Source: Malacoraja senta | Taxonomy: Eukaryota | NCBI GenBank assembly: GCA_038087875.1 | Contig: CM075986.1 | Location: 17,670,001-17,734,000 of the forward strand | DNA: 64,000 nt | Reading direction: 5' to 3' | Part shown: positions 588-60,545 of the stretch, piece by piece | How positions within the stretch are numbered: the first letter of the stretch is position 1 | Layout of the letters: each line of letters opens with the position of its first letter | Program-made: the position numbers and the translations under genes | The notes under the pieces: model-generated | Database searches by the model: none | Told to the model about the DNA's origin: nothing | The model's input: only the letters and a program-made list of their open reading frames with translations

Positions 588-815
588 GGTACACAAAAAT
601 GCTGGAGAAACTCAGCGGGTGCAGCAGCATCTATGGAGCGAAGGAAATAGGCAACGTTTCGGGCCGAAACCCTTCAGACTTCAGTCTGAAGAAGGGTTTT
701 GGCCCGAAACGTTACCTATTTCCTTCGCTCCATAGATGCTGCTGCACCCGCTGAGTTTCTCCAGCATTTTTGTGTACCTCCGATTTTCCAGCATCTGCAG
801 TTCCTTCTTTAACAC
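588..815 (+). mobile_element. Penelope-like non-autonomous fold-back element with hammerhead core
   Basis: ~95-bp inverted arms plus ~37-nt 3' tail; 16-bp TSD AACCATGTTGGTGGGA at 572-587 and 816-831; CTGAAGA-A-GGGT-TTTG-GCCC-GAAA-CG-TT at 686. Confidence 0.85.
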
Positions 816-3019
816 AACCATGTTGGTGGGATTGGCCGCTAATACACCATGCTATGCTAACCTAAATAAAGTCATGAGGTGATTTCCATTTAGCTCAATG
901 CAACCTCTCAGCCAAAGTCTAGACACAGTCACGGCTCTACAGCCTGAAATCTGAAATGTGGCTCAAACCCTTGATCTTCTGATTCAGGTGAATGAGCAAG
1001 TCTGAATTAAAGCAATTGCCAACTAAAATCCCAAATTTTACCTAACCCAATGCAACCAGCTTTCTAATCAGAAGGTAAAAGCTTGAAGTCAGGGTTTACA
1101 TTTTGATTGGAAACTCCTCCTGCGCTTGGAACATTTGACAGTTCCATATTAGGCATCTAGCTGAAGACTAGCAGAGCAATCAGCGTCCCACCGCACGGGG
1201 GTAGGATTCTGGCCAATGTTCAACACTCGGACCCATCAAACCAGGACATGGAGTTGGTGCCAGTCACAGCGTGATCTTTTCGTTTCACCTGGAGGAGGGC
1301 ATGTACTGAGGAGAATGCTAAGGAAAAATGCCAAAGAAAACTAAATCTGCATAACGTATTCAGTGCAGAATGTTGGAGAGAAGAAATCTCAGGAGCGAGT
1401 CTCAAGTGGTGAAAGGAGATCAGAATCACATTCTGATGTGTTGGCAGAGCAGTGGGCTTGTGGCATATCAACGGGGTCTTTCTCATCTGCAATAAAGGGT
1501 AAATACTTGCTAAGAGTTAATCAGAGGTGGAGCTGGTGAGAGGGAATAAGAAACCAAGTTAACAGCAGAGGGAATGTGGATTCAACATTCAGAGGCATTT
1601 TATACCAACACCTGTCAAGAGAGACGAGTACAGAATTCCCAAGCAAAGAATGATACTCAAAGCTGGTACAGGTAACGAGGCAATTCCTCTGTTGATCTTA
1701 ACCAAGTTCCCTCGCACTGGCGGGCTCTTTTCACAGTGTTGTCCACTCACATTCTCATCAAAGTAGTCAATGGGAGGAAATGTGGCAGATATGAAGGACT
1801 GTGGTTAAATGTGCTACAGTACACCTCAACTTCTGTGCGTGCTACATTGCAGAGTTTCATGAGAAAATCGATTGGGGAACATGTTTTACTATGGCTAGCT
1901 TGAAGTTTGAGATTTTGCTCTGCATGTGACAAACCTTTATGTAGTGATGCCCAAATATTGTCTGTGATTACAATGTTTTGCATTATGTGCTCATGTAGAA
2001 GTGAGGTTCAACCAAAAACATAAAACCTATTTCACTGAGATTTAAAGGGGACCCATTTAAGCACACTGGGTTTCGACATTGGGAACTGGCTGCAGGTACA
2101 TGTTCTTTAAGGTGAAATATTTCCCTCTTGTTGAAGATAAGAAGGGCTTATTTGAGATCACAAGCTCATTGCTCCATTAACACCGCTGAAATGTGATTCT
2201 GATCTCCCTACACCATCACAGCCGCACACCCTTGCTCGTAACACAGATTGGGCCGAATGCATACTAATATGTTTCACTGCTGAGACGGGAGCTGCAGATG
2301 GTTGTTTACCAAAAAAGATACAATGCTGGAGTGACTCAGCGAGTTAGGAACATCACCTATCCATGTTCTCCTGGGATGCTGCCTGACCTACAGAGTTGCT
2401 CCAGCACTTTATATCTTTTGTAATATGTTTAATTGCCTGCTTAGCACATCTCTTCAACACTGTAGAACTTCTGAATAACATCTGGGTCTGTCCGATAGAA
2501 TTATATACAACAAACAGAAATGCTGCAGCATATGTTGCTCATTAGAGGCATTAAAAACTGCAGATGCTGGAATTTGAACAAAAAACCAAACCACTGGGGG
2601 AGCTCCGTGGGTCAAGCAGCATCTGTGGAGGTGGAGGAATCGTCAGCATTTTGGACTGAGACTCCGCTCAGAGTATTCTGTTCATTGACCTGTGTCTCTG
2701 TATTTCCAGATTTCACAATGCTTTTTCAACTTTTCCATACTACTTAAAGGTTACTTAAAAGAGTGACTCTCCCAACAGTACGTGCAACCGTTCCAGCGCA
2801 GAGCTCCTTCAGATTCAGCACTGTGACAGTCAGCTTTAGAGCAGTGAGCATCTCCTGCAGGGAAAATTTCCACGGGCCAACGGAACAGTTTTTAAAAGGT
2901 TTGTGTTTGGCGATCAATGCTCTTGTAAATGGAGAATGGAATCAATGCTCTTGTCAATGAAAGTTTAAATACGTTTGCTGATTCTGACGCACTTCTGACT
3001 GACTCTTGACTGAAGACTT

Positions 3020-3154
3020 GAGTCTGAAGAAGGGCCTCGACCTGAAACGTCACCTATTCCTTTTCTCCAGAGATGCTGCCTGTCCTGCGGAGTTACTCCA
3101 GCATTTTGTGTCTATCTTCAGTGCAAACCAGCATCTGCAGTTGCTTCCTACACA
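3020..3154 (+). mobile_element. Penelope-like terminal repeat, single copy
   Basis: AGTCTGAAGAAGGGCCTCGACCTGAAACGTCACC...CAGCATCTGCAGTTGCTTCCTACACA, same module as 28409-28539. Confidence 0.75.
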
Positions 3155-5448: not shown

Positions 5449-5925
5449 GGGGGGACCTCATTGAAACCTACAGAATAATGCAAGGCATAGATAGAGTGGA
5501 TGTGGAGAGGATGTTTCCACTGGTGGGAGAGTCTAGGACCAGAGGTCATCGCCTCAGAATTAAAGGGTGCTCTTTTAGAAAGGAGGTGAGGAGGAACTTC
5601 TTTAGTCAGAGGGTAGTTAATCTGTGGAACTCATTGCCACAGAGGGCTGTGGAGGCCGAGTCAGTGGATGTTTTTAAGGCAGGGATAGATAAATTCTTAG
5701 GTACACAAAAATGCTGGAGAAACTCAGCGGGTGCAGCAGCATCCATGGAGCGAAGGAAATAGGTAACGTTTCGGGCCGAAACCCTTCTTCAGATAAATTC
5801 TTGATTAGAACGGGTGTCAAGGGTTATGGGGAGAAGGCAGGAAAATGGGATTAGGGGGCAGAGGTCAGCGGAGTAGACTCGATGGGCTGAATGGCCTAAC
5901 TCTACTCCTATAACTTGTGAACTTG
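5449..5925 (+). mobile_element. CR1 LINE 3' fragment (interrupted at 5699-5790)
   Basis: RGDLIETYRIM...FFSQRVVNLWNSLPQ; 3' hairpin region. Confidence 0.9.
5699..5790 (-). mobile_element. Single-arm Penelope-like element inserted into a CR1 fragment
   Basis: TSD AGATAAATTCTT at 5687-5698 and 5791-5802; CR1 sequence resumes after it. Confidence 0.8.
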
Positions 5926-7799: not shown

Positions 7800-7832
7800 G
7801 GTACCGGACCATTGAGTTAATACTCTCCCTTA

Positions 7833-8297: not shown

Positions 8298-9504
8298 TTA
8301 CTCTCTGGATTTCCATTCCACTTTCACATTTCCAGGCAGCACTGTTTTCCTTCAAGTGTCTGGTCTTCACCCCTGCTGGGGCAACAAAAAAGTGTTTGTT
8401 TCATTTGGAATACCATACAGTAGTTCCACAAGTCATGAGAATAAATATGCAGGCCCAAACATATTCCTCAAATATAATGCAGTTATGTCTTTGGAAGTTG
8501 TCGGCAGCCACAAGCCCTGTCAAACCCATTGACTTTTTCTTCTGATCAATGTGTCTCAGTTTGCTACCCTCTGACATTTCTAGCCCAAGTGTACACATTT
8601 GATCACACACCTCCATCTTGGATTGTGTTGTGTTAATCCATCACCACGTGAAAGAAGAAGTCAAGGGAACGAAATTTTCCTTGGAAAGAAAAACACTGGG
8701 TTTACACCTCCCTTCATATTCATAACCTGGTTGGAAAAAAAAAAATCACATTTTCAGAAATGCCAAGGACTGAAGGGAAATGGGCGATCTGGGGTGGAAG
8801 GAGTTGCCTGGAGCCCATCTAAACCTACCTCCATCAATTAACTTAGAGCTGTATCCAGGGGAGTGGACACTGAGCAGTTATCCTGGCCTGAGTTCGATGA
8901 CCACACTGTTGCAGGTTTCCAAGGTTGTTTTCATGCACATCATTTAGCTGTAAATATCCTCCACTCACTGTATTGTTTTCTGGAGAAATTGCCCCGGTTT
9001 TATTTGGAGAAGTTGCTTCCATTTCTCTTTTCCCAATCCGAAATTAGATTCTGCTTTTGACTACAATGACTTTGATGTACAACTACAAGTTTGCTAAGTC
9101 ACATGTCCTCACCCACCTCAAACACATTGATGTGGTGTGGTCAATATATATATATATATATTGACCACATATATATACGTCAATGTGGTGCCTCATCAAT
9201 GTGGGGCTTCACCCTCACTAGAGGCTCAATGGTCTGTAGGAATATACTCTTATGTGCTTCAGTGTCATGCAATGTCATATTCTGGGTATCGGGTCCTTAT
9301 TAATATAGGGAATAATAAATAGTAAACCTCTTTTCCCAGGTTGGCTTCAGTGAGAAATCCATATTTTTTTGGATACATCCAGAGATCTTAACATTATCGG
9401 TGCTTTCAACTTCTGGTGAGTTAACACCACACACATTTACAAAGCATTTGCACAGAGTAATAGCTATAAGGAGAGGTTGGACAATCTTTGATTGTTTTCC
9501 CTGC

Positions 9505-11164: not shown

Positions 11165-11202
11165 TGAGTCTGAAGAAGGGTCTCGACCCGAAACGTCACC
11201 CA
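11165..11202 (+). ncRNA. Minimal hammerhead ribozyme motif
   Basis: TGAGT-CTGAAGA-A-GGGT(CTCG)ACCC-GAAA-CG-TC|ACCCA; helix I 4 of 5 pairs. Confidence 0.65.
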
Positions 11203-13701
11203 TTCCTTCTCTCCAGAGATGCTGCTTGTCTCGCTGAGTTACTCCAGTGTCTGTCTCCCTTCTCCTGAACTTGGGGTTGTCTATGCTCCAAGACAATCCA
11301 TGGCAATCCGAGGATTGAAGACTAACATTCATAGCCTTCTGCAAGCAATTCAGGAGAAAAGTCTTAAAACGTTTTCATCTTTTTTTATTGCTTCAATTAA
11401 TTAATTTAAAAATAATGATGGTGAGGAAAAGGGTGTTTGGACTCCAACTCAGAAATAATCCAATTGGTAAATAGAGTTTGTTCCCCCACCAATAAAAAAA
11501 AACTGCCCCTGATTGTCTGGGCTAAAAGCCCAGTACAGAAACAATTGTGAACCAAACTCTACTTCCGGAATTTGGTTCAGTTGAAGTAAATGGATTGAAT
11601 GCAGATTCTCAAGACCTAACTGAGTCCACTGACATAGTTGCAACTGAAAGTTGGAAATCAGATCAAATAAGGACTGTGGTTACTTCTCCTAAAGAGTAGT
11701 CCTTTCCCCACAGCCGTGGTCACTGCTATTGATACTGGTTTTTCTTCTCCAGTTTATCTAATTAAATGATTTCACCTTCTTCGTCTGCCAAGGTGGTCTT
11801 TGGAGACATCTCCAGATCATCAAGCCAGAACTCCAGACAATTTGTTCGGTAACTTAAACGTTTATTTCTATAAGATTATAAATAGAAAGAAGACTGAAGG
11901 ATGAAAGTATTTTGCAGATTGGAGCCTTTGAAGGAAATATGATGAACTCCACATGGAATTTTTAAAACCTGAGGATATGTCCCACTTGGAAATGAAGCAT
12001 GGAGAACAAGAGAAATTTGGATAAACAATTACTTTGGTAGAGGATAAAAAATGTTGTGACTGAGAAAAAGCGGCGACAACTGTTGCAAGGATCATTGATT
12101 GTTTGACGTGCTGTATATCTAACAACAAGGAACTGCACATGCTGGAATCTTGAGCAAGGCACAAAATGCTGGAGGAACTCAGCAGGTCAAGCAGCATCTG
12201 TTGAAGGAATGTGCAGACAGCGTTTTGGATTGGGACCCTTCTTTAAACGGACTCGTTGAGATCCTCCAGCACTTTGTGTTTTGCTTTTTATTTTTGTACA
12301 CCCGATATATATGTTGCAAAAGAGATAAATAACATCCGAGGTGAAATACTGAAAATAGGCCTATGATCTCAAAGTGGGTGGAAGGGAGACTGCTGTTTGT
12401 TAGTCCCAACCTGGAAATAGTATTCAGTTACTGCTGGTAGGACATCTTGTTTCAGATTAATTAAGCAGCAGTAACACAATAGCATGAGGCCGCATGATCA
12501 CACCAACATTTTGTCTGGAGTAAGAATAGACCAACTTCCATCCCATGGTACCCTACAGAGCACATTAGAAGTAATAACTTCACTGCATTGGATCCATGTT
12601 TAATAGTTTAAAAATAAAATTGAAGCTGAGCTCCACAGCTGTGAAATCCTTTGACCAAACGCAGTGACGTTGACTTTAACAGTACGGTTGGGATATCTGG
12701 TTTTGGTTTTAATATTCTTGTAAACACATCCTAAATAAATCCCTGAAAAATGTCCCTTTAAGACCGGATCTCGGCTGCGTTTTATTGGCAATGCCTTAAA
12801 ACAAACAGTCTCACTCACAGCATGGAAAAAATTACTGTTCTTGCATCCCCTGGGCCCCTTTGATAGTCTGATGGAAATAGAACTTACAAAGGACGTATAG
12901 TTTGTTTAAGCAGAGGTTCAGTACTGGAAACAGTGAAGAGACTTGGCACTGGACAGCAGTGCTGGAACGGTTTGTATTTGAGGCAGCTGCTGGCAGCGGG
13001 ATTCACAAGGAAAAAATGATACACCTAACTTATAACAAAATATTCAATTTATGGCTTACTCTGTTTAATACAGTTTCTTCAGCTTACGTCTGCTCTGAAT
13101 GCAACGTGTCATCATCTGGCTGACAAACCATTATCTGTTTAACGTCCTTCACATCTCATGAAGTCAGTCTCCCGCTTGGATATGACAACCTGGCCCATCC
13201 ATTAGCTGCTGTTGTGGGTGAATTGGGGAAAGAGTGCCGATAGCTGTGAACACGAGAGAAAAAAGATTTGCTTTCCTATAGCATCTTTCTTGTCCCTTTT
13301 AGGAAATTCCCGACGCGCCTCCCAGCCCGTTACTGACTGCTGAAGTGTGGTTGAGCTGTGGGAAACTGACTGGTGCACAGTGAGCCCCCATGGCCGTTTC
13401 ATGATAGGATAAACTGCTTCAGTGAGTGGATGATAAATGCCAGCCACTACCCGGGAGACAACTGCCTGCTCCCCAGTGAGGTACTGGCAGACGTTGCTGC
13501 AGTTTGTGTTTCTGGGTACCTTGACCTGGATTGTCTGTTCCACGACAGACTCTGCTTTGAGCTCAGCAAACAGCCCACCGTCATCATCATCGTTGAAAAC
13601 ATCAACAGGCACAATGCTATGTACGACAGTGATCGCAACTTCGCAAACAGTCCATCCTAAGTACCACCTTTTAGGTAAAGCTGTGTTATCAATAAACGAT
13701 T

Positions 13702-13925
13702 GTTCAAGAAGGAACTGCAGATGCTGGAAAATCGAAGGCAGACAAAAGTGCTGGAGAAACTCAGCAGGTGCGGCAGCATCTATGGAGCGAAGGAAATAGG
13801 CAACGTTTCGGGCCGAAACCCTTCTTCAGACTCTGAAGAAGTGTTTCGACCCGAAACGTTGCCTATTTCCTTCGCTCCATAGATGCTGCCGCACCCGCTG
13901 AGTTTCTCCAGCACTTTTGTCTACC
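13702..13925 (-). mobile_element. Penelope-like fold-back element with hammerhead core
   Basis: Same family as 588-815 in opposite orientation; TSD TTATCAATAAACGATT at 13686-13701 and 13926-13941. Confidence 0.85.
13799..13832 (-). ncRNA. Minimal hammerhead core, UUCG-loop subfamily, sense to CAVIN1 intron
   Basis: Reverse complement AGT-CTGAAGA-A-GGGT(TTCG)GCCC-GAAA-CG-TT|GCC; helix I only ~2 bp. Confidence 0.55.
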
Positions 13926-16159: not shown

Positions 16160-16380
16160 TGAAAAAAACAAACCGCTGCTGAAACTCTGCAGTTAGGCAG
16201 CATCTCTGAAGGGAATACACAGTTGACGGTTCGGGTGTGGACCCTTCATCAGTCTGAAGGATCCCGACTTGAGATGGTGCCCGTCTATCCATTCCTTCAC
16301 ACATGCTGCCTGACCTGCTGAGTTCCTGCAGCACTTTGCTTTTGGCTCCAGATTGCAGCATCTGCAGTTCCTTGCGTCTC
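16160..16380. mobile_element. Older diverged Penelope-like fold-back copy (similar decayed copies at ~2283-2420, 2550-2730, 12128-12290, 17388-17590, 22193-22239, 26759-26877, 28920-29155, 37880-37970, 48590-48835, 50365-50475, 52245-52430, 57080-57210, 57565-57725, 63660-63748)
   Basis: Recurrent motifs GCTGGAGxAACTCAGC / GATGCTGCCTGACCxGCTGAGTT / CAGCATCTGCAG. Confidence 0.7.
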
Positions 16381-16559
16381 CATCGAAGTGAAAATTCTGT
16401 GCTGCCATTTGTGTTGATTACCTGGTCTGTGAAGGTGGAAATGAGCAATTGTGTTTCCCCAACATGGAATCTGTGGTTGGGGAGTGGACACAAGCTGCAG
16501 AAAGAGGCCACTTGACCAGCCAGTCCTTAATGGGGTTTATATTCAACTTCAATACAAAC

Positions 16560-18190: not shown

Positions 18191-21100
18191 TACACTGTGG
18201 ATGGCTTCATTGTAATCATATCTTTTCTTTTCGCTGACGAGATTGCATGCAACAAAAAATCTTTTCACTCTACCTCGGTACAGGTAATAACAAACTACAC
18301 TCTAACTCTTAAACTCTAAACCTATCTGCCTGGTTCTTGAAGCACCTCTTAATGGCAACAACATCTCTATTTATCCTGTCACAAATGCTCACCCCTCTAT
18401 CAAATATCCAATAAGTGCCTGGAATAAATCTTATCCAAAGCATATTTTATCACAATCAAATATTGAAACATAATTTATGTGTGATTATGTTATCTTTGTG
18501 CTCAGTTGCCTCAGGACGTTTTTGCCACCTTGTGTAAGTCTGAAGGTGGCATAGGCTTGAAGCAGACAAGATTGATCATGTTTAAAGCTCTGATGCTTGA
18601 CGTGCTGAAGGCTGCAACAATGTGGATCGTTAATATACAAAGAGGCTGGACCTTTTTGTCCAGTTCAAAGTTCAGTTCCTCCAGGGTTTCTCCAGGGTAT
18701 CTGGCCTCTTGAGAATTTGAAAATAACTATTTACAAAGAGTTACAGGATCACGAAGGCCACTTCTTTAAAGAAATGGAACAGTCACAAGATCGTCAGGAG
18801 GCAATGAATAATCGAGGTCAATCTCAACCAAATAAAATCCTCAACATAATAATAAAGCAATTTACGATCCATCTTTGGTCATCCATCTGCATGGGATCCA
18901 CATTTCCCCCCGATTATTGGCTTAAAATGAACGTCATTTCATTTAGCACAATATAAGGCTTTCATTTCCAGTGCAGAAAAACATCTTGTGAATAGATGAA
19001 ATTATTTCACCAATTTGGTCTGCTTCTGTACGGTCACATGTGAGGGCACTGGGCAGATTCATTGCAAATTTGCTTAACATTATTTGTTATCAGAGCTGGG
19101 TTATCCTGTACAACAATTATTAATTCTCCAAAGCAGGTTAATGTCTGCCTCCTGCAGAGATGCCAGTATGTTTTTCCTTCACTGGCTGCTCCTACTTATG
19201 GAAGTTAATGCACAGGCGGGGAATTGTATAATTTGCCTGATAGCTTACTGGAATGATTCAAGGCTATTTTTGTGCCATCATATCGTGAGTGCAGGCGTGG
19301 GGGATGCGTACAGTAAGTGGCAGAGAATAGAAGGAACAGCTAGAGTTTACTGCCATGCATGGGGTATCTGTAAAACTCCAGGAAAGATCTCAAATGATTT
19401 ATTCCGGGAAGAAGGGCTTTGCATGTCACAGTTTGTACTTCAATTACTTTAAAATAAAATTAAAGGTTACCACGCATCTGCCAGGATGCGATCATTAATT
19501 TTCATCTTGACAGAAGTGTGATGCTCACAGATAATACGGTGTAATGTAAAGGGAGTCGTAAAGGCAATGGCTAATATGAACAGTAGGACTTTAGGGTACT
19601 GAGACTAGAAGGCAGAGAGAGGAGGGTGTGAGAGAGGTCACAAGCCACAGTCATAGTAAGTGTAATGTGTAATAAAAATAAAACTGCTGGGTGGGGGGGG
19701 GGGGACTCGGTAGTTCGAGCAGCAGCTACGTGGGGAAAGGTATTGTCGATGTTTTTCGTCGAGACCCTGCATCAGGCTTATTGCCACATGTAATGCTGCT
19801 GTGGATTTGAACTGTTTCAACCAGTGATGTCCCAGATTTCATCCTATAGCCAAGAAACAAGGCCAGAATACATTCCCGTTTGGATGCTAAAATGGCCCTA
19901 AAATCTCCACAAGAGCAGATGTCTCAATTATGGAGCACATTTGTACACTGGCAAATACAAAACACATGAGTGGCTGTGCCCACGTCTGTAATTGGCCTTG
20001 AGCCCTTTATGTATGCAATGTCTGTGTTGCCTTGCATTTTTAATTAGCTTATCGACATTCACTGCCTAAACAAAACTAAAACCAATCTGTAACATGTCAA
20101 TGTATCTGACGAAAACAAAATGATTCGCAGCAAGAGAGCCCCTCATCCTGCAGATTAACCCACAGAACAGGGTTAAAGAGGCGGTGACTTAGAAGCTACT
20201 TTTTGGAAAGATCCCCAGGAAATCATTCAATCTCACAAACAGAAACACATCTGCAAAAACTTAATCTTAAAATGTATAATCATACAGTGCAGCCTCTCTG
20301 AGCAAGGAGGAAAGGATGTCCAATTTCAGGAGGTGCAGCTTGTTGTAGACCAGGGTTACAGAGTACATAGACAACACTGCAGTGATCCCAGAGAGACTGG
20401 GGTTGTGGTGAGGCTCCAAATTCTAGTTTCATGTCCTGTTGATAATTAATTGATTGACCCTCCAGTTTTCTGAAGGCATTGACTCACACAGGGGGGATGC
20501 CATTCCTCAGATGCAAGGACAGACAGACTGTTCTCCAGAGGGGCATCACAACTGAACCTATTCGTGCGGAATATTTTCCAGGGGAGGTCACGAGACAGGT
20601 GTTGTTCTAGACTTTGCGTAGGGACGTGGAGGTCAGTCTCTGCTGCACTATTACCACCAAGGTTATGGACACCGCCAGCCAAGCTGAGTTGGCAGGGCTC
20701 AACGTCATAGAGACGGAAATGACTTTGGTCTTGAAATTATGCCACATGACACAAACAACCCCCTTCACCATTGCAAGGAGGCTCAACATCAAGTCCTGTC
20801 GCTCCTAGAACTCTTAATCTGATGATTCTCAGCTGGAAGTGGTGGGCGCTCAGGTGAGTCATCTGAAGCGTGCAAGGCTGAGCCAGGAGCCGACATCCCA
20901 CTTCACTGACGTGCAACTGGAAATAGTGACTGCAGAAGAGGTCTCCAAGGAAAGAACAGAAGCCCCTCAATCGCGCCCAACCAACCACATGCACGCACGT
21001 TCGCACACACCAGGAAATTAGGGCCTCTCACAGTTTGATCCATTGTTGCATCCATCAGTCTTCTCAATATCGGACTCCCCACTGAGGCTTGCTCCATCAC

Positions 21101-26681: not shown

Positions 26682-28304
26682 GACACAGATTATTCACAAA
26701 ATGTTCTGACCCTGACTATTGTGAGCCAAGCACAATACAGCTCTATTCAGAAAGAAGAATCTGAAGAAGGGCCTCGAACCGAAACGCATCCATTCCTTCT
26801 CTCCAGAGATGCTAAGTTACACCAGCTTTTGTATCGATCTTCGGTTTAAACCAGCATCTGCAGTTTCTTCCTACACTCAATTCAAGACAAGTCCATTTGA
26901 CATGACATGTAATTTATTTTTAAAATTAGAGTATCCTGATAAATAACTGAACAAATCAATTCATTGCATTGGATCAGGCAACAGAAGCACTGCTCAGGCC
27001 TGCTGGAAGAGCAAACCAGTCTCAACACTTACTGTACTGCTGTAGTCGTCACCTGCACCTCAACCTCTGCAGAACATTCCATTCCCTTAGTCTCCCCATA
27101 AAACACAGTATATTCGATAATGCTTGCATTTAGGTGACACATTATCAAAGTTGCAACATTCCCAGAATTAATTACTTTGGAAGTGTTGTAACTGGAGTTA
27201 CTGGGAAAGCGTTTAATGTAGTAAGATAGTGTTTTATCCCAGCAATGGAATCTCGACTAAGTGTTTGTTTCTGTGAGATTATTTGTCTGTTTGTACGTGC
27301 CAACTTCTGTGTGACTGTTGTATCATGTCTATTTGTTTATTATCTGATTATATTTGGTGTGCCTGTTGGACCATGCGTGAAGTTTTATGTGTTGGCTTGT
27401 TTGTGTTTCTATGTACAATGTATCTATTGAATTGTGTGTACTACGGTGCGCCCATTAGATCATGTGCTTCTGTTGCATTGTGTGCCTTTTTCTATTGGAC
27501 TATGTATGTCTATTGGCTTCTGTTCATTTCTGTTGAATCTTAAGTACATGGGTGTAGGTTTATGTGTTGTGTGTTTGTTTATGTATTTGAATGTTTCTGG
27601 TGGATCATTGTTTCGTGCATCCATTAAGTCCTGGTATTTGTGTATATTTGATGGGTCATATATGTTTGTACAATCCAACAATCCGGCAATAGTGGAAAAA
27701 ACTATTTAAAGTGACACAGACCATCCGACACACATTTATTGTTCAATAATCGAACAATCCCACACACACACACAACCCCTTACAATGTATTGTCTGCCAT
27801 ACAGGCAATCCTACAAGGAATACAAATAGGCACAGCCTGATGTGCACACACTCCCCAATAAATACAAACGTAATCCGATACATATACACATAATCAAACA
27901 CACATACGAATCTGCCCATACAAGGAGAAGGTTAATTATAGTTGCATAACTTTCTTATGACTAAGTTTTCAAAGTTAGCTTTTAGTAGTTAAGGATTGTT
28001 GAAAAATCTTTGGAGCCTTGGAACTTATTAATAGCATCTGCATAATAACATAATACAATTTAGGAATATAATCACAGCAGATGTGCAGAGATATATTCTG
28101 ATAGTCTCGGTCACAGATTAATCCTATGCCCAGCAGATTGACTCAGGCAAACGAGCATCTTGTTTTATTATTACCCAGCCGATGAAAGAAAACTGCAACT
28201 TTGGCCAGAAATGGTAGAGGACAATTGCAACAGCAGGAACCAGAGAAAATCTGCTGACTTCTGTAGGAAATGAAGGAGTGAGTTCATCAACCAATATAAT
28301 CCTC

Positions 28305-28539
28305 CCGAAGATAGACACAAAAAGCTGCAGTAACTCAGCGGGACAGGCAGCATCTCTGGAGAGAAGGAATGGGTGACGTTTCAGGTAAAGACCCATCTGC
28401 AGAGAGAGGTCTGAAGAAGGGCCTCGACCCGAAACGTCACCCATTCCTTCTCTCCAGAGATGCTGCCTGTCCCGCTGAGTTACTCCAGCTTTTTGTGTCT
28501 ATCTTCGGTTTAAACCAGCATCTGCAGTTCCTTCCAACA
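28305..28539 (+). mobile_element. Penelope-like fold-back element, second subfamily
   Basis: Inverted arms plus tail; TSD CAATATAATCCT at 28292 and 28540. Confidence 0.85.
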
Positions 28540-35447: not shown

Positions 35448-38424
35448 TCTCAACGGTCTGGTGCGATTTGAGGATGTGGATGGAATTCCATCACTGATGC
35501 TAAATGAGAAAACATTCAGTCCAACAATTCGGTGTTTTATCCACAGAACCCTTTCCCATCTTACTTCATATCATCTCCTCAACCTCTCCTTCAAGTCCTT
35601 TCTGCCTGAGTCCGGCTGCCTATTAACCTCAGCCTTGGGGACTTAACGATATGACTTGGGCTTGGTTTGGGTTGGATCGAACTGTGCCATGTTTACCTGG
35701 TCCAGTATTTTATCCAGGTCAGAATTATATGCCTAGTATTAGTGCATGTGTCCTCTGCTCTGGGTCAGTAGCAACGTGCCTGACAGATAGCCAGTGGGAC
35801 TTTTCCACTTTCCCATAAATGCTTCTCAGTCAGGACAGTTGTGGAAACATTGAGATGGCGTTGGACAGAGGTTAGATTTGGATTGGCCACCGTGAGAGCG
35901 GAGTGTGTCGGGTTCTAATTTGACACAGATCTCAATTTTCTGCCACGTATCTTTTCCAGATTCTGATTAAATCTATCTCCACTAATCACTTCAAGAACTC
36001 TGTGTGGGAGCACATTCCGCTGCCTTCTAAATGAAGGAGTTTTTTCTTGAGCTCCTTTTTAGATTTATTGATGGTTATCTCCTTTCTACAGTCCTGACTT
36101 TAGGCTCCCCCAACAGTGGAAGATCCTATGGTCAAATAACAAAACACCAAGCGTATTGATTATGTAAGCAACATTATGTAAAATTGATTTTGAACAGTTA
36201 GATTCTGAGCAGACCTGCTAGTGGACAACAGTTTGCAGTCACAAACTGTGATCAATTCAAAGTTATTTCTTACGGTTTGTAAATTTCTCTTGCAGAAGCT
36301 AATGAATTGTTGGCGAGTTCCCATAGGCTAATATAATATAAACCAACTGTTTTCCTTTATTGCTATCCGCACTGACACAAGGATTTGCATATGTGGCAAA
36401 ATAAATGCAATATCTCTCATTTGTCTGCCTAAATCAAATATGAAACCTCAGCAACCATGGTACTCTGTGGACTGTGTCTGCAAGTTGCACGACTGACTTT
36501 GGTTTTGCACTATTACGGTTACATAGTATTATGGTTATTAATTTATTCTATTACTGATTATTGTATATTTATCTGTGCATTGCTTTTATAGACCTGTTAT
36601 GCTGCTGCAAGTAAGAATTTCATCATTCAGTTGTTGGCGAATATGACATTTAAACACTCTTGATTCTTCATTCAGAGTTAAAGTACAGAAGGAAGTTATC
36701 TAACATATCACCAACTGTCTAATCCAAGGCATTCTTCTATGCTTTCAGTTCATACAAGCATTCTTTCTTTTTAAGTATCTTTTTATGCTTAATGTTATGT
36801 TAAAAGCCATTTGCGTAAAGTTTCTAAATGTGTCCAATTTCTTCCTTTTTCATCTCTTGATAAGCCCAGGTCTTTGCTCTGCGCTGAGGATTTATCAGGC
36901 ACTGAAGACTCGCTTTGATGTTTCTCCAAATATTTTGTCATTTAAAACAAATTTACTATCTTCCCCTTAGGTTCCGAGCTTTTATTTGCAACTACAATCT
37001 TACATTTCTGATAGCAGTAAAGTGAATCTTCAGGGGACTTGCTTTCTGGGACTGTTATCTTCCTATCACAAGATGCACAGAACCACACACAATACTCCAA
37101 CTGTGGTCCAATTAATGCCATGCACCAACTTAACAATTTGTTTCTTTCATAGTCCACACCCCCGCAAATAAATCTCAGAGTTGCACTCGCTTTTATTTCC
37201 ATGCATTTAAATTTTAAATCCGTGAGTTCCATTAGAGTTAAAATTGAATCCTTGCTTTTGAAAGTCTTTGGACATGTGAAGGAATAAACCCGAGGAACTA
37301 TTTAACATGGTCATTTGAGTCGAGACTGAATTCCTGATTATTTTACCCTTTATAATGGGCCCCACCCAGATCAGGCATTGCTGTTCAGGGGAGGTGGACA
37401 ACTCCCTCTGACACAGCCTTGCCTCAGTCACTGACTCTCTTTAAGTGAACGCCAGAAGATGTGGAGGATGAGGACGAGCAGTTGTTCTTTACTGACGGAG
37501 CGGATGCAGAACTCATTTCAAGCAAGGAAGCTGTGAAATTTAATGCCTTTATAATTAATATTGGATTTCTAGCCTGCATTAAATTGGCTGAAAATAAACT
37601 CTTCCGAAAAAAGAAAAAAATACTTGGAGCAGATGGTTCTGTAATTGCAGTACCAATTGCTGACACGCAGGCAGGATAGCTGCACAGAATCAGATTGTTG
37701 AGGTATTTTGCAGCGTTTCCTCTGCACACTGCAACAGGTACTCTGAAACACTTTCACAATTTCACTTGCATTCGTGAAACTGGAAATAGGCATTGCCTCT
37801 AATGCAGAGGGATCAGACAGTATCTCCCAACTCATGATTTGCAAGCTGTGCTGTGGAATCAAGTCTCCTTGATTTGAAGGCAGACACAAAAGGCTGGACT
37901 AACTCCGTGGGTCAGGCAACATCTCTGGAGAAAGTGAATAGGCGATGTTTCTGGATTGAGACCCTTCTTGATTTGAATGGTCTGGAGCATGCAGCAAGGG
38001 TCTGACGTTTGCTGATTGTGTATTGGAGTCTGGTTACACAGCAGGGGGTTGCGGTGAAAATACTTCTAACGGTTGTCACATCACAAAGGTCACTGATCAG
38101 CATTCCACATACTGCAGATACAGTTAGAACTAACTCAGCCCAGCCAGCGAGCAACCCCACCCCATTCTTGCCCGCTTCTGAATGAAAGTTCACTGTGGTT
38201 ACTCCTCATAAATATCAAAACATTAAGCCTCAGATCAAAAGAATTACTCCTTGCATTGTTTTAAATTTTCTCTGGTTACTCTGATGTCGAGATACATAAG
38301 TATACACACATACATACACACACACACATCCTAATACATATTCCAACAGTCAACAACACACAAACGCTCACTAACACACGTGCACACACAAATACACACA
38401 AACTTCAATCAGCGAATGACTTAC

Positions 38425-38889
38425 CCTGTAGACCATTACTTTGAAGTTATTCCGTTTCAGCAGCACGGCCTCGTTTGATTCGAGCTTCTTGATCTGCGTT
38501 GCCTGCTTCTCCATGTTATGCTTGATGGTCTTAACATTGACACTGACTTTCCGAATCTTCTCCAGCATCTTGTTGACACTGTTTGCTGAGGTTGTATGCG
38601 ACTTGGTGAGTTTGCTCAGCTCGTTTTGAATGCTGAACACGGCGTTTTCCATCTCCTGGTGCCGCTGCTCGAGCTGCTGCTGGCTGTTTTGGATCTGATC
38701 AACCATTCCCACCACTTTGTCCAAGAGAGTGAGCACCAGCACCCCATTGAACTGAGGCTCTGACTTTGAGCTTTCATTCTGCTTCTGCGGCTCTGGGGGC
38801 TCCGGGCTCTCCTGCTCCTGTTCCCGCTCCTGGTCTTGCTCCTGCTCCAGGTTCAGCTCCTGCGCTTCTGTCTGCATGGTGTCTGCCAT
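38425..38889 (-). CDS. CAVIN1: Caveolae-associated protein 1 (PTRF/cavin-1), coding exon 1 (155 codons); exon 2 lies outside the window
   Basis: Translation MADTMQ...QFNGVLVLTLLDKVVGMVDQIQ...KVSVNVKTIK...QIKKLESNEAVLLKRNNFKVMVYR matches the cavin-1 HR1 region. Kozak ACCATGG at 38889. Phase-0 donor AGG|GTAAGT at 38424, the same position as the mammalian ...FKVMIYQ| junction. Divergent neighbour of ATP6V0A1 as in human. Confidence 0.95.
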
Positions 38890-39300
38890 GGTTGGAAATG
38901 TCAAACTGGGATTGAAAATACCAACTGAACCTGGGCTGACTGTGCTGGGATGGAAGCCAGTTGTGCGGGGAGAGAGAGAGAGAGAGAGATAGAGAGAGAG
39001 GAGCCTGGCTGTATGTGCTCTCACTCCAGTTACACAGCTGCTCAAGAAATGTCCAACAAAATGTGCAAGCTTAAAAGGACATCAGCTACTCCACCTAGCT
39101 GCACAGTGTGAGACTGCTGAAGTTCATGCCAGCCCCCTCCTTAAATTGTTTGAATAGTTGGGAGGGAGTTGAAGACTTCCAATGCAAGCACGGGCACATC
39201 TAACGAGGAATGCACACCTCCAAGAGAAAATATCGCAGACCTGAGACAGGAATGTTTACAGAACTGTGCTCTACATGTTAAATGCTAAATAACAGACTCT
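38890..39300 (-). promoter_or_regulatory. CAVIN1: CAVIN1 5'UTR/proximal promoter with (GA)n tract and two TEAD/MCAT motifs
   Basis: Position directly upstream of the ATG; GGAATG at 39207 and 39249; TGTTTAC forkhead-like motif at 39253; (GA)n ~38970-39000. TSS not determinable. Confidence 0.5.
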
Positions 39301-40281: not shown

Positions 40282-40790
40282 GACAGAACAATGAGATTCT
40301 TACTTGCAGCAGCATAACAAGTTAACGATACTCGGTAGATAATATTATAAACAAACAAAAATAGAAGACTCCAATATTCACGCAAAACCAAACAAAAGCC
40401 CGAGGACTCGAATGCAACCAAGGCAGTTCCTCATTTGGTGTTTAGTTGGGGTTTGTAGTGTTCAATAGCCTGATGGTTGTTTGGAAGAAACTGTCCCTGA
40501 ACCTGGAGATCATGGTTTTTCCGAATCCTATACCTTCTTCCTGATGGCAGGAGTGAAATGAGACCTTGGCCAGATGGGTGTGGGACCTTGATGACCCTGG
40601 CTGCCTTTTTGATGCAGCGCCTCCTATAGATCCCTTCAATATTGGTCAGCTTACTACTCATGATGGACCGGGCAGTGTCCACCAGCTTTTGTCATCTTCT
40701 TCATTTCTGGGCATTCGAGTTCCTGAACCGGGCAGTGATACTACCCCTCAATATGCTCCCTACCGAACAAAGTCATAAGCTTAGTTTTTT
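40282..40790 (-). mobile_element. Rex1/Babar-type LINE 3' fragment
   Basis: IEGIYRRRCIKKAARVIK..HPSGQGLISLLPSGRRYR; SRFRDSFFQTTIRLLN. Confidence 0.8.
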
Positions 40791-51592: not shown

Positions 51593-54146
51593 AATGACAG
51601 CTCTCACCCTCCTTTTCTCAACCTTCTGGTGACTACGCATGTGATATTGCTGTGCCATAGCTTCAGTTCCAGCCGCTGGTATTTCTCGTGTGGAGATTGC
51701 ATGCTCTCACACTTTCCACCAAATGCTCTGGTTTCTTCCACAATCCAAAAACCTTCTGCGTGGCAGATTAATTGAGTATTAAGATCTGGAGGGAATTGAT
51801 GGTACTGTTCGAAAAATAAGATGGGTTAGTAGGATTAGTGTAAATGGGTGCTTGATGGTTGGCATGACTTTTGATGGGCTAAAGTTTCCATGTTGTATGA
51901 TTTTTATGAATATATAACTCTAAAAATCAAATCCTTTGTATCAAACCATAAAACATCTCTGTTTGCCGTAGGCATAAATTATTGGATCCAATTCCAGAGA
52001 CATTTCTCTAACAATGAGTAATTGTTTGGATTCTATCATGTGCATACCATGTGTCTAAATGTCTGTAGAGTCCTTACGCATAAAGATAACACGAGTGTAA
52101 CAGTGTTTAGATTTTTTTCTTGGAGTAAATCGAGCAACATGGGACAGTAAACTTAAATTGCATTGATTTAAATCCAATCGAACTGAGAAACCAGGTGATT
52201 GCTGTCAGAGGAGGATTAATCTATGGCACTCTCTGAATCGGTAAGCAAAAAAGTGCTGGAGGAACTCAGCGGGTCAGGCAGCATCTATGGAGGGAAATGG
52301 GCAGATGATGTCTGAAGAGATCCTGACCCAAAACATGACTGTCCTTTTCCCTTTACAGATACTGCCTGATCTTCTGAGTTCCTCCAGCATTTTGTTATTT
52401 CCTCAATATTCCAGCATCTGCAGTCTCTTGCCTTTGAATCAGTGAGGATAGATTCAGGCCCCAGGTCTATTGTTGAGCTCACAAATGCAGTGATGTATGA
52501 GGGGAGTGTTGATAGGTTTCAAAATGCACTGCAGTTACTCAACTGGGCAACCGTCAAAACACTTCTCAAACCTGGAAGTTCTACACCAAGAATGAAAAGA
52601 ACTTCAGGTACATGTACATCATGATCCACAATTTCCCCTTTAACATTGCCTTTGTCCATTATCACAGTGTTTACATTTTGGAACCCCATTCCCAGAAGGA
52701 TTTCAATTGTTCAAGAGGGTGGCTTCACACCAACTTTTCAACGGTCCATTAGCATTGATTAAAAAACGTTGGCTTCCCTATATTATTAGAATAATAATCC
52801 CCATATTATTAGCAAAGTACATTTCTGTCATGCTTTCCTCAATGCAGTAAATAGTATAAGACCTCGACATTACTAAAACCATAATAATTTTTTTGTGTGC
52901 TAAAAAACGTAAAATTTCACAATATTTTTCCTTCACATCAGTTTATGAGTTCAGGTGTCTTGAAAATGATTCCACTGTTCACCCCTATATATTCAAATTC
53001 TTTCTCATATCCACTTTGATACACACCACTTGTTCTACTTGTAAACACAGCCCAGTCCATCACCCAGGACAGGCTCCCCTCCCCATCGACTCCATCTACA
53101 CGCTGCCTTGAGAAAGCAGCCAACATGTTTAAGGACCACTCAAGCTCTGGTCATTCCCTTTTCTCTTCTCTCCTGTTGGGCAGAAGATATAAAAGCTTGA
53201 AAGCATGTACCACCAGATTCAAGAACAACTTTGTCCCCTTTAATATCAAATTCTTGAATGAAACGTTTGATAACTAAGGATGAATTCCTGCTCTTCCCAT
53301 CTACCTCTTGTGGCTCTTGCATTTTTTTATTTGCACTTTCTTTGTAGCAGTACACTATATTCTGAAATCTGTTTGTTTTCTCTGGTGCATTACTCATGCA
53401 TTGTATGATTTGCCTGGACAGCTCATAAATCTAAGTTTTTCCCCTATAATTTGGTACACGTGACAATAATAAACCAATTATTCAACCATTTACTATTATT
53501 CAGCAAAATATTTTGTTACATAACGTGTTGAAGTGTGATGCGTTGTGAACTTAAACTAATTTCTAAAAAGATCAGGATTGCTCACAAAATGCGGTTTACT
53601 TCAATTATCAATAAACATATCACAATATGTTTTTTGACAGGAATGAAATGAAATCTATAAACTAAACTTTTCCTTCAACAATTGAATTCAATTAGTTTCC
53701 TAATCCACAGGGTGTGACCGACTCTGCTAATTTACAAGACACATACATGCAAGAGCTAGTCTTATCTCTTTTCAACCACTGTAACATAGGAGGTGGTGCA
53801 TTTGCAGAACTGATCACGTTTACTTGAAATGTATCTATCATTTGATAATAATAAATGGGTGGTCAAACCAGGTAGAGAAATAAAGATTAGAACACTAATG
53901 CAGAGGAATCATAATAATTAAAAGTCAGTTATACTTAAACCCAGCAAAACTTCCAATAGTACTAATGTGTCCTTATGATTGTCCAACCACAGTTACTGCT
54001 CAACCACTTAATTGCTTTTCACACCAAAAGGTTAAAAATATCTTTATTTCAAGAATGTGCTGAATATTTTGTCTGCCTCCAGAAATAGTTTAAGTTTAGA
54101 CTGAGAAAGAATAGTTTTTTATACAATAAATTGGGTGTTACGATAA

Positions 54147-54182
54147 GGGTCTGAAGAAGGGTCTCGACCCGAAACGTCACCC
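54147..54182 (+). ncRNA. Minimal type I hammerhead ribozyme motif (PLE-type), best-formed copy
   Basis: GGGT-CTGAAGA-A-GGGT(CTCG)ACCC-GAAA-CG-TC|ACCC: helix I GGGT/ACCC, intact core, 4-bp helix II, palindromic ACGT in place of helix III. Activity not demonstrated. Confidence 0.75.
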
Positions 54183-54710
54183 ATTCCTTCTATCCAGAGG
54201 AGCTGCCTGTCCAGCTGAGTTACTCCAGCTGTTTGTGTCTATCCTCATATCATTGGTCAGTATTAGTTTATTATTGTCACATTTACCAAGATACAGTGAG
54301 AGGTTTGTATTTGTATGCTATCCTGTCAGATCAAAATATGCATGAGTACAATCAAGCCATGCACAACTACAACAGGTAGTCAAAAGAGAAAAAATACCAC
54401 AGTGCAGAATATAGTGTTACAGCATTACAGTTAAAGAGAAAAGGTCCAAGATGCACAAGGTTGGAAGATCAGGATTACACACTCTGGTTTATGCGATGAT
54501 CTGCTAACAGTGGGGAATAATCTGGTGGTACATACTTTTGTATCCTCTGCCTAATGGGAGAGGGGGGATGACCCTGGTGTGAGTTGTTCTTGATTATGTG
54601 GACTGCTGCTTTCCTGAGGCAGCGTGGAAGTGCAGATGGAGAGTCAGTGGGGGGGTGGGGGAGCAAAGCTCTTGCTCTGGTGTTCACAGATACAGGATCT
54701 TTGCTGGTTG

Positions 54711-56257: not shown

Positions 56258-56608
56258 GTTTAAGAAAGAACTGCAGATGCTGGAAAAATTTAAGGTAGAT
56301 TATCCAGCATCCGCAGTTCTTCCTTAAACAAGTGCTGGAGTGGCTCAGCGGGTCAGGAAGCATCTCTGGCGAACAAGGATAGGATGATGTTTTGGGTCGG
56401 GACCCTTCCTCAGAGTTAAAGGGTTATCTGTGGCTGGGGTTCTCTCCCTCTCTCCTTTTTCTCTCTTTGCCACACCAAATGTTAGAATCACTCCTCTTTA
56501 GCACCCCTGGAGGTCTATCAAATCTGAAGAAGGGTCCCGACCCGAAACGTTGCCTATTCCTTCTCTCCAAAGATGCTGCCTCACCCGCTGAGTTTCTCCA
56601 GCATTTTT
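56258..56608. mobile_element. Composite Penelope-like insertion (tail hairpin + arm + ~110-nt filler + arm) in ATP6V0A1 intron 1
   Basis: Flanked by TGATCATTGCAGCT (56244-56257) and TGATAATTGCAGCT (56609-56622). Confidence 0.7.
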
Positions 56609-59499: not shown

Positions 59500-60545
59500 C
59501 ACGAGTGTTTAGTTGTCAATTCACCAGGAACAGAACAATGGCATTTTACTTGAAGCTTTTAAAGGCACATTAACAAATAACACAACAAATAATTTATTGT
59601 ATTTTTGTTTATTATACATTTATCGGTTATACTAGGTAACCAGACCACTATAATGCAAATGTATCTAGTGCAACCAATACAAAGTCCACAGTGTTGCTGA
59701 GGTAGGGTTGTGGCTAGGATTGTCTAGTGTGCTTCAAAAGCCTGATGGTTGTTGATGGGGTGAAGCTGTTCTTGAACCTGAAGGTAACAGTACTTATGCT
59801 TCTGTGCCTTCTTCCTGATGGTAGCAGCAAGATAAAAGCATGGCCATGGAGGTGTGGATCTTTGGTGATTAGCTGCCTTCATGAGGCAGCACTTCTTGTA
59901 GATCCCTTTGATGTGATGGTCAGTAGCCGTGATGGACTGAACAAATTCCACCACTTTCTGCACCATTTCTGAGCGTTTGGGATACCAGTGTGCTCTCAAC
60001 CACACATCTGAAGAAGCTTGAGAGAGCATTCAGCAACATGCCGAATCTCTTCAAACGTCTGAGCAAGGAGAGTTATTGATGAGCTTTCTTTGCGATTGCA
60101 TCATTTTGCTGGGCCGAGGACAGATCTTCAGAGTTGTGCATGCCCTGAAACGTGAAGCTGTTGACTCCACTGTTGTCCCACCGATGAAGTCAGGCTTGTG
60201 GATCCCTGGCCTTCTCTTCCTGAAGTCAGCATCAGTTCCTTGGTCATGCTGGAGTTGAGAGCAAAACTGCTCTGGCACCACTCAACCAGATTATCAATCT
60301 CCCTCTGGTACTCTGACTCATTGTTACCCTTATTCATTCAACAGCAGTGGTATGGTTGGTGAATTTAAAGATGGCATAGGAGCTGTTTCTGGAAACATAG
60401 TTGTGGGTATAGAGCGAGTAGAGCAAAGGGTTGAGCATGCAGACTTGAGATGCCCCTGTGCTCATGGTCAGGGAGGATATGTTGGCAATTTGTATTGATT
60501 GATGTGGATAAGGAAGTTGAGGACCCAGTTGCAAAGGGAAGGGGA
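59500..60545 (-). mobile_element. Decayed Rex1/Babar-type LINE (RT core to 3' end)
   Basis: STGASQVCMLNPLLYSLYTHN...IFKFTNHTT, ESEYQREIDNLVEWCQ...LNSSMTKELM, IKGIYKKCCLMKAA motifs in broken frames. Confidence 0.8.

What the first reader, a model, noticed from the sequence alone, without database searches (positions are those of the whole stretch)
54147..54182. High-copy repeat carries a minimal hammerhead ribozyme core
Seen: GGGT-CTGAAGA-A-GGGT(CTCG)ACCC-GAAA-CG-TC|ACCC folds as a type I hammerhead, with helix I (GGGT/ACCC), CUGANGA, an extra A, 4-bp helix II, GAAA and a GUC cleavage triplet. Helix III is reduced to the palindrome ACGT. The same core recurs at 686(+), 11170(+), 56524(+), 5762-5793(-) and 13799-13832(-), and with a helix II mismatch at ~3024(+) and 28411(+). 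Two subfamilies keep helix II paired while changing it: GGGT-CTCG-ACCC with GUC versus GGGT-TTCG-GCCC with GUU. Established: Penelope-like elements carry minimal hammerheads with palindromic helix III that cleave as dimers. Inference: at ~25-30 loci in 64 kb, this genome may hold a very large number of ribozyme-bearing repeats.
Basis: partly seen in the sequence, partly recalled or inferred. Interest (0 to 1): 0.85.

Follow-up and report, generated by a model that had tools for sequence, protein, structure and literature searches.

The report
Penelope-type minimal hammerhead in ray repeat
The commonest short repeat in this stretch of a ray or skate genome is the end-piece of a Penelope-like jumping gene and carries that family's already known stripped-down hammerhead ribozyme motif, but nearly all copies here are incomplete relics that cannot cut themselves unaided.

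Summary
The motif is real. CTGAAGA-A-GGGT(CTCG)ACCC-GAAA-CG-TC sits at 54151-54178.

It heads a 95- or 133-nt retroposed unit. There are 43 arms in 31 insertions, covering 6.5% of the window.

The insertions show Penelope-like element (PLE) hallmarks:
- two alternative 3' ends about 35 nt apart (the PLE "tail");
- 12 head-to-head inverted pairs, each with one tailed and one untailed arm;
- 10-15 bp target-site duplications (TSDs).

The core has the same build as the tested Anolis Poseidon ribozyme (CUGAGGA-U-helix II-GAAACGUC|A). Four subfamily consensi keep the core while neighbouring bases drift. Shark and electric-ray relatives keep helix II through two-sided changes.

- Helix I (GGGT/ACCC) is not part of the repeat. 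The unit starts 2 nt before C3, and the two extra G's at 54147-54148 are flanking DNA.
- Only 2 of 29 arms have 3 or more helix I pairs.
- The helix II "covariation" inside the window is a one-sided U-A to U-G change.
- The dimer fold is energetically poor.

Verdict: a new member of a known kind, with very many copies, mostly dead. First-stage notes on other pieces of this genome describe the same repeat.

The parts
54149..54247 (+). Solo repeat unit, short (untailed) form, subfamily A. This is the flagged copy.
   Evidence: nhmmer model positions 1-99, E=8e-29. No inverted partner lies upstream.
54151..54178 (+). Minimal hammerhead core: C3UGAAGA9, an extra A, helix II GGGU/ACCC with loop CUCG, G12AA, then A15.1-CG-U16.1-C17. 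The predicted cut is after 54178.
54147..54150 (+). 5' strand of helix I (GGGU) in this copy. 54147-54148 are flanking DNA and only 54149-54150 (GU) belong to the repeat.
   Evidence: Upstream bases differ in every copy.
54179..54182 (+). 3' strand of helix I (ACCC), immediately after the predicted cut site.
   Evidence: The isolated 48-mer has the hammerhead secondary structure as its minimum-free-energy fold, -11.0 kcal/mol.
686..713 (+). Intact minimal core, subfamily B (GGGU-UUUG-GCCC, GUU).
11170..11197 (+). Intact minimal core, subfamily A, identical to the flagged one. Helix I has only 2 bp.
56524..56551 (+). Intact minimal core (loop CCCG, GUU).
5765..5792 (-). Intact minimal core, subfamily B. 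It lies in a solo unit (5699-5790) flanked by a 12-bp TSD.
13802..13829 (-). Intact minimal core, subfamily B, in the long arm of a fold-back insertion.
3024..3051 (+). Core boxes intact, one helix II mismatch.
28411..28438 (+). Core boxes intact, one helix II mismatch (C·A). Helix I has 3 bp through a flanking G.
588..816 (.). Head-to-head insertion: inverted short arm (96 nt) plus tailed long arm (133 nt), arms 97% alike, 15-bp TSD ACCATGTTGGTGGGA.
13699..13925 (.). Head-to-head insertion: tailed arm (133 nt, - strand) plus short arm (94 nt, + strand), arms 95% alike, 13-bp TSD.
28304..28539 (.). Head-to-head insertion: short arm (100 nt) plus tailed arm (131 nt), arms 93% alike, 12-bp TSD.
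16166..16384 (.). Older head-to-head insertion (arms 75% alike), 10-bp TSD. One arm carries CUGAUGA, so N7 is U.

Best explanation

Shown here:
- Each copy runs from a fixed 5' base, 2 nt before the hammerhead's C3.
- It ends at one of two 3' ends about 35 nt apart.
- Copies occur alone or as head-to-head pairs with one tailed and one untailed arm.
- Each insertion has a 10-15 bp TSD.
- The first 30 nt are the PLE-type minimal hammerhead: CUGANGA, one unpaired nt, a short helix II closed by G10.1-C11.1, GAAA, and a palindromic CG in place of helix III.

Inferred:
- The two 3' ends are the two internal start sites of the PLE reverse transcriptase.
- The inverted pairs arise because the enzyme nicks and extends both DNA strands.
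- The hammerhead was kept by selection in the master elements, not in the copies.
- In the parent it cuts only when a second copy and the element's own protein help it fold.
- The copies in this window are inert relics. They lack the 5' strand of helix I and helix III, and two thirds have core mutations, mostly from CpG decay.
For: Motif:
- Six strict-descriptor hits against 0.02 expected per shuffled window.
- For one 135-nt consensus read on both strands, the chance expectation is about 4e-5.

Same build as known PLE hammerheads:
- The extra nt after A9, G10.1-C11.1 and palindromic 15.2/16.2 are the emergent features listed by Cervera & De la Pena (PMC4209133).
- The Poseidon_Ac junction reads ...ACCU-CUGAGGA-U-GCC..GGC-GAAACGUC|AGG. 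Its C3/G8 mutants lose cleavage and the double mutant partly restores it.

PLE insertion hallmarks:
- 3' ends cluster at model positions 83-104 and 119-137 or beyond. TSD-delimited arms are 94-100 nt versus 131-133 nt.
- It also matches two adjacent start sites with extension of both strands in vitro.
- 12 of 12 pairs have one short and one long arm (P about 2e-4).
- TSDs of 10-15 bp flank whole pairs and solo units.

Constraint in the masters:
- Among four subfamily consensi, 1 of 11 core columns varies, and that one is a CpG. In contrast 8 of 15 vary at positions 31-45 and 12 of 25 at 82-106.

Other species:
- The family is present around cavin1 in Narcine bancroftii (18 hits in 72 kb) and Heptranchias perlo.
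- On the joint alignment helix II is paired in 96.5% of cells. Three of 5 pairs change on both sides (G-C/A-U, U-A/C-G, C-G/U-A). 0 of 500 shuffles reach the covariation score, and slid controls score 0.07-0.16 against 0.42.
- The two shark copies have a 5-bp helix I that covaries (GAGUU/AACUC versus GGGUU/AACCC).
Against: - No reverse transcriptase or GIY-YIG reading frame lies in this window. The link to a coding PLE therefore rests on structure and on unchecked first-stage notes from other pieces of this genome.
- No Rfham... correction: no Rfam hammerhead model matches, even at E up to 10.
- Within the window there is no covariation beyond chance.
- The 5' strand of helix I is missing from the unit.
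- The double-hammerhead dimer is worth -20.3 kcal/mol for the flagged copy, against -32.1 for the best dimer fold. For a typical copy the figures are -6.1 against -23.7.
- A competing hairpin (positions 5-14 with 31-42) sequesters the core.
- Other blocks of the unit (46-58, 67-81, 107-121) are as conserved as the core, so conservation alone does not single out the ribozyme.
- The electric-ray family reads CUUGAUGA, a departure from the core consensus.
- 5' ends do not pile up at the predicted cut site.
- The cross-species covariation rests on about three lineages.
Confidence: 0.8

Rival explanations
1. The flagged locus is a self-sufficient monomeric type I hammerhead that cuts its own transcript after C54178.
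For: In isolation the 48-mer 54143-54190 has exactly that secondary structure as its minimum-free-energy fold, -11.0 kcal/mol. All core bases are intact, with a 4-bp helix I and a 4-bp helix II.
Against: Two of the four helix I pairs come from flanking DNA, so the feature is an accident of the insertion site. There is no helix III, because A15.1-U16.1 would have to close a 2-nt loop, and no loop-loop contacts. In the 99-nt unit a competing hairpin wins. Published PLE minimal motifs show no activity as single motifs (PMC4209133), and the Anolis one needs protein.
Confidence: 0.06
2. The match to the hammerhead core is a coincidence or a by-product. The conserved first 30 nt serve another purpose, for example a start site or promoter element or a protein-binding site for the reverse transcriptase, and never cleave.
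For: The unit is a mosaic of equally conserved blocks. The fixed 5' edge lies inside what should be helix I. 5' ends do not map to the cut site. In Anolis, ribozyme mutants insert normally and no RNA-seq reads end at the cut site. PLE clades without hammerheads proliferate well (PMC8557442). The electric-ray family has a non-consensus core.
Against: The chance expectation for this one consensus is about 4e-5. The build is the same as a tested PLE ribozyme. Helix II, and in sharks helix I, are kept through two-sided changes. Variation within CUGANGA falls mainly on N7 (A or U).
Confidence: 0.12
3. The units are a non-autonomous retrozyme-like family that multiplies through self-cleaved, circularised RNAs rather than as by-products of a coding PLE.
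For: Thousands of short non-coding units with their own subfamilies. A 2026 preprint links animal retrozymes to PLE pseudo-LTRs and reports them in one cartilaginous fish.
Against: Retrozymes are defined by head-to-tail tandem units, each with a complete type I hammerhead. None of the 43 arms here is in tandem. The units lack helix I. Unit ends do not coincide with the cut site as a circle-derived copy would predict.
Confidence: 0.08
4. The repeat is a tRNA-derived SINE or a fold-back or inverted-repeat DNA transposon (MITE) unrelated to ribozymes.
For: It is short, abundant and non-coding. Many copies are inverted pairs with TSDs.
Against: No tRNA-like head was found (ARAGORN 0) and no Rfam match. 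There is no A-rich or simple-repeat tail. Half-units insert alone with their own 11-12 bp TSDs. TSD length varies from 10 to 15 bp. The arms are always unequal by the same 35-nt tail. None of this fits a cut-and-paste element.
Confidence: 0.02

Closest known systems
Minimal hammerheads of metazoan Penelope-like elements (Cervera & De la Pena 2014, PMC4209133; Lunse, Weinberg & Breaker 2017, as cited in PMC6765202)
   Same: No helix III. Palindromic 15.2/16.2 (CG). One unpaired nt between A9 and 10.1. G10.1-C11.1. Mostly dispersed single motifs, some as close pairs on opposite strands. Several consensus families per genome.
   Different: Helix II is short (4 bp plus a tetraloop, against 6-8 bp). 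The retroposed unit starts 2 nt before C3, so helix I is not carried. Density here, if typical of the genome, would be far above the 4,000-9,000 motifs reported for coelacanth and Xenopus (an extrapolation).
Poseidon_Ac (PAc) of Anolis carolinensis (Frangieh et al. 2024, PMC11167929)
   Same: Same build (CUGAGGA-U-helix II-GAAACGUC|A against CUGAAGA-A-helix II-GAAACGUC|A). Reverse transcription starts at two sites tens of nt downstream of the cut site, giving a 30-40 nt optional tail. Both target strands are used. The start region is AC-rich (the long arms here end ..AACACA or ..AACAAT).
   Different: In PAc the reading frame starts inside the ribozyme and the start sites lie 82-89 nt past the cut. 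Here the sequence after the cut is non-coding in subfamily A, and the ends lie about 65-70 and 101-105 nt past the cut. No coding part is in the window.
Drosophila virilis Penelope hammerhead (PMC4209133)
   Same: A very short helix I (2 bp) and a boundary (there an intron's 3' end) falling exactly at the 5' end of helix I.
   Different: The fly motif has a bulged helix II and a 2-nt palindromic insertion in helix III. Here the boundary is the end of the retroposed unit, not an intron.
Canonical type I hammerheads of Schistosoma Sm-alpha, newt satellite 2 and animal retrozymes (Rfam Hammerhead_1)
   Same: Type I strand order, with a weak helix III that calls for dimers.
   Different: No loop-loop tertiary contacts, no tandem arrays, and no Rfam match.

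Membership tests
Hammerhead ribozyme (catalytic core) | C3-U4-G5-A6-N7-G8-A9 box | tested here: met
   Present in the flagged copy and in all four subfamily consensi. 10 of 29 arms have no core defect.
Hammerhead ribozyme (catalytic core) | G12-A13-A14, A15.1-U16.1, and H17 before the cut | tested here: met
   GAAA-CG-U-C/U. H17 is C in subfamily A and U in subfamily B.
Hammerhead ribozyme (catalytic core) | Helix II closed by 10.1-11.1 and supported by covariation | tested here: met
   4 bp with G10.1-C11.1. No support within the window. Across window, shark and electric ray it is 96.5% paired, 3 of 5 pairs change on both sides, and 0 of 500 shuffles reach the score. Only about three lineages contribute.
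Hammerhead ribozyme (catalytic core) | Helix I flanking the core and the cut site | tested here: not met
   The unit begins 2 nt before C3. Only 2 of 29 arms have 3 or more contiguous pairs, both through flanking bases. The feature is met in the two shark relatives.
Hammerhead ribozyme (catalytic core) | Helix III | tested here: not met
   A15.1-U16.1 enclose only CG. A 4-bp ACGU/ACGU helix is possible between two copies, but that fold is far above the minimum free energy. This absence defines the 'minimal' PLE class.
Hammerhead ribozyme (catalytic core) | Match to the curated Rfam hammerhead models | tested here: not met
   No hit at gathering score in the window, nor at E up to 10 in 53900-54500.
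Hammerhead ribozyme (catalytic core) | Site-specific self-cleavage | not testable with these tools
   Needs a bench assay.
PLE minimal hammerhead | Unpaired nt between A9 and 10.1, G10.1-C11.1, and a palindromic 15.2/16.2 replacing helix III | tested here: met
   A at unit position 10, G11-C22, and C27-G28. Criteria taken from PMC4209133.
PLE minimal hammerhead | Lies in the pseudo-LTR next to an RT plus GIY-YIG reading frame | not testable with these tools
   No such frame in the window. Only unchecked first-stage notes from other pieces of the genome say so.
Penelope-like element insertion | Optional 30-40 bp tail, often at one end only | tested here: met
   Arms of 94-100 nt against 131-133 nt. 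12 of 12 pairs have one of each. Criterion from PMC8557442 and PMC11167929.
Penelope-like element insertion | Inverted copy adjacent at the 5' end, with TSDs of variable length | tested here: met
   12 head-to-head pairs. TSDs of 10-15 bp flank whole pairs.
Non-LTR retrozyme | Head-to-tail tandem units, each with a complete type I hammerhead | tested here: not met
   No tandem pair among the 43 arms. Helix I is absent.
tRNA-derived SINE | tRNA-like head and an A-rich or repeat tail | tested here: not met
   ARAGORN found none, Rfam found none, and the 3' ends are not A-rich.

The most novel reading that the evidence does not exclude
The insertions may record the PLE integration mechanism in vivo.
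- Each head-to-head pair, always one tailed and one untailed arm, would come from one event in which a dimeric enzyme primed the two DNA strands from the two adjacent start sites.
- The fixed 5' edge inside helix I would mean that unit-length RNAs begin too late to form the hammerhead. Only read-through, tandem or fold-back transcripts could then complete it.
- In the sevengill shark the two fold-backs seen carry one core only. Their other arm begins exactly at the cut-site base, so the whole fold-back stem would be helix I.
- The ribozyme would then act as a sorter of transcript types rather than a simple processing site.
Probability: 0.15. Interest if true: 0.6.

Novelty: new member of a known kind. 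Interest (0 to 1): 0.35.

Why it matters
PLE hammerheads have been known since 2014, but their role is still open. This family adds a cartilaginous-fish member at very high density: 6.5% of this window. If that is typical, the genome would hold on the order of 10^5 intact cores and 10^6 arms, which is an extrapolation.

The copies are clean enough to read the element's mechanics from the genome. They show two start sites, one-sided tails, use of both strands, and 5' ends that do not lie at the ribozyme cut. That agrees with the in-vitro finding that cleavage is not needed for insertion.

For annotators, these are motif-bearing relics and not thousands of active ribozymes.

Tried and rejected
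- Rfam at gathering score on the whole window, and at E up to 10 on 53900-54500: no hammerhead family.
- ARAGORN: no tRNA-like head.
- Pfam on the ten longest reading frames, and six-frame motif searches for GIY..YIG and YxDD: no PLE protein, only a cavin exon.
- Covariation among the 29 window copies: no better than shuffles. Dead copies inherit their pairs.
- Hidden inverted partner upstream of 12 solo units, including the flagged one: none significant. An eyeballed similarity at 54125-54140 was therefore rejected.
- Exact-pattern scans of metagenome and viral contig collections: no match.
- Full-text search for the motif's letters: no paper.
- Lunse et al. 2017 is not held in the library, and the Cervera 2014 supplements are not held.
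- DNA for three further shark cavin1 loci could not be fetched because the files were too large.
- Reading the fixed end as a 3' end, with the ribozyme antisense, was considered. It was rejected because the two variable ends match the PLE tail and start-site pattern.

Full report
**What is there.**
- The window is vertebrate DNA. A cavin1 exon at 38374-39045(-) is 87% identical to the electric ray Narcine bancroftii and 75% identical to sharks. The genome is therefore an elasmobranch, probably a ray or skate.
- The 28-nt core recurs with 0-3 mismatches at seven further places.
- 300 dinucleotide shuffles gave 0.02 hits per window. For a single 135-nt consensus on both strands the chance expectation is about 4e-5.

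**The repeat.**
- A profile built from six long copies finds 43 arms, covering 6.5% of the non-N bases.
- The unit starts at (A)GTCTGAAG, 2 nt before C3. Upstream bases differ in every copy.
- It ends either near model position 95-100 or near 131-135. TSD-delimited arms are 94-100 nt and 131-133 nt.
- 24 arms form 12 head-to-head pairs joined at the hammerhead end. Every pair has one short and one long arm (P about 2e-4 if the arms were chosen independently).
- TSDs of 10-15 bp flank the whole pair. Solo units have their own TSDs of 11-12 bp.
- Arm identity runs from 97% down to 75%, so the family has been active over a long period.

**What it is.** These are published hallmarks of Penelope-like elements.
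- An inverted copy lies next to the 5' end, and a 30-40 bp 'tail' is often present at one end only (PMC8557442).
- In vitro, the Anolis Poseidon enzyme starts reverse transcription at two adjacent internal sites whose spacing is the tail. It also cleaves and extends both target strands (PMC11167929).
- The Poseidon_Ac consensus, read across its tandem junction, is ...ACCU-CUGAGGA-U-GCC..GGC-GAAACGUC|AGG. That is the same build as here, down to the GAAACGUC box.
- The extra nt after A9, G10.1-C11.1 and the palindromic 15.2/16.2 are the features Cervera & De la Pena list as emerging from PLE minimal hammerheads.
- No RT or GIY-YIG frame lies in this window. That last membership criterion is untested here. 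First-stage notes from other pieces of this genome say that GIY-YIG relics end in this motif, but I could not check them.

**Is the hammerhead under constraint?**
- Within the window the copies are relics and give no covariation signal.
- Four subfamily consensi keep the core. One of 11 core columns varies, and it is a CpG. In contrast 8 of 15 columns vary just after the cut site and 12 of 25 at 82-106.
- Other blocks (46-58, 67-81, 107-121) are equally conserved, so this is supportive but not specific.
- I fetched the cavin1 loci of Narcine bancroftii (L001) and the sevengill shark Heptranchias perlo (L002). Both hold the family: 18 and 5 profile hits.
- Helix II reads GGGU/ACCC or GGGU/GCCC in the window, GGGC/GCCC in the ray and AGGUC/GACCU in the shark.
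- On the joint alignment helix II is 96.5% paired and 3 of 5 pairs change on both sides. No shuffle reaches the covariation score, and slid controls are far lower.
- The two shark copies also have a 5-bp helix I that covaries (GAGUU/AACUC against GGGUU/AACCC).
- Caveats: only about three lineages contribute, and the ray family's core reads CUUGAUGA.

- Helix I is not carried by the repeat. At 54147-54148 two flanking G's happen to extend it to 4 bp.
- Only 2 of 29 arms reach 3 bp.
- The isolated 48-mer does fold as drawn (-11.0 kcal/mol). In the full unit, however, a hairpin between positions 5-14 and 31-42 wins.
- The double-hammerhead dimer through ACGU/ACGU is worth -20.3 kcal/mol against -32.1 for the best dimer. 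For a typical copy it is -6.1 against -23.7.
- This fits the reported low activity of such motifs and the protein dependence of the Anolis one.
- Of 29 arms that retain the region, 10 have an undamaged core and 6 also keep helix II. G12 is the commonest loss, through CpG decay.

**Mechanism.**
- Shown: unit boundaries, one-sided tails, TSDs, and the motif with its conservation.
- Inferred: the two 3' ends are the reverse transcriptase's two start sites. The pairs come from priming on both strands. The common 5' end is the template RNA's 5' end, perhaps the parent's transcription start, since PLE start sites are known to lie in the pseudo-LTR (PMC6765202).
- 5' ends do not gather at the cut site. 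This agrees with the in-vitro result that uncleaved RNA is the main template.

**Verdict.** This is a real member of the known PLE minimal-hammerhead class, in a lineage where I found no paper in the searched library describing it. It is very abundant, and mostly dead. First-stage readers noted the same repeat in many other windows of this genome.

Noticed in passing
L002:5680-5920 and L002:14080-14320 (Heptranchias perlo): Both shark fold-backs carry a single hammerhead core, in the long tailed arm. The short arm begins exactly at the base after the predicted cut (AACCC.. / AACTC..). A transcript of the core strand would therefore be a type I hammerhead whose helix I is the whole fold-back stem. 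Only two cases were seen.
   Followed up: partly
window unit positions 50-57, 79-86 and 109-116 (e.g. 28458-28465, 28487-28494, 28517-28524): AGATGCTG is the exact complement of CAGCATCT and a near-complement of CAGCATTT. Each CCAGCAT box lies 12-25 nt before one of the two 3' ends. These are the most conserved blocks of the unit and may be the signal for reverse-transcription start.
   Followed up: partly
window 54153-54190 (unit positions 5-14 and 31-42): GAAGAAGGGU can pair with ACCCAUUCCUUC just after the cut site, a hairpin that competes with the hammerhead fold. The lower stem is kept in subfamilies A, B and D but not in C.
   Followed up: partly
L001 (Narcine bancroftii), e.g. 19680-19730, 8205-8255, 66281-66331(-): The electric-ray family extends at least 15-20 nt further 5' (..TTTTCC.CATACC) than the window's unit. 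Its core reads CUUGAUGA, meaning either U in place of C3 or an inserted U.
   Followed up: partly
window 38374-39045 (-): Exon of caveolae-associated protein 1 (PTRF/SDPR family, E=2e-46). The closest named relative is from Narcine bancroftii.
   Followed up: yes
window 40626-40700 (-) and 59898-59970 (-): Two reading-frame fragments share a ..EGIYRRRCIKKAA.. / ..KGIYKKCCLMKAA.. motif that looks like the tail of another retroelement protein. They are not PLE GIY-YIG.
   Followed up: no
window 16164-16253 (-) and 19678-19775 (-): Two old copies read CTGATGA instead of CTGAAGA. The only free position of the core box (N7) is where they vary, as in the shark and ray families.
   Followed up: partly
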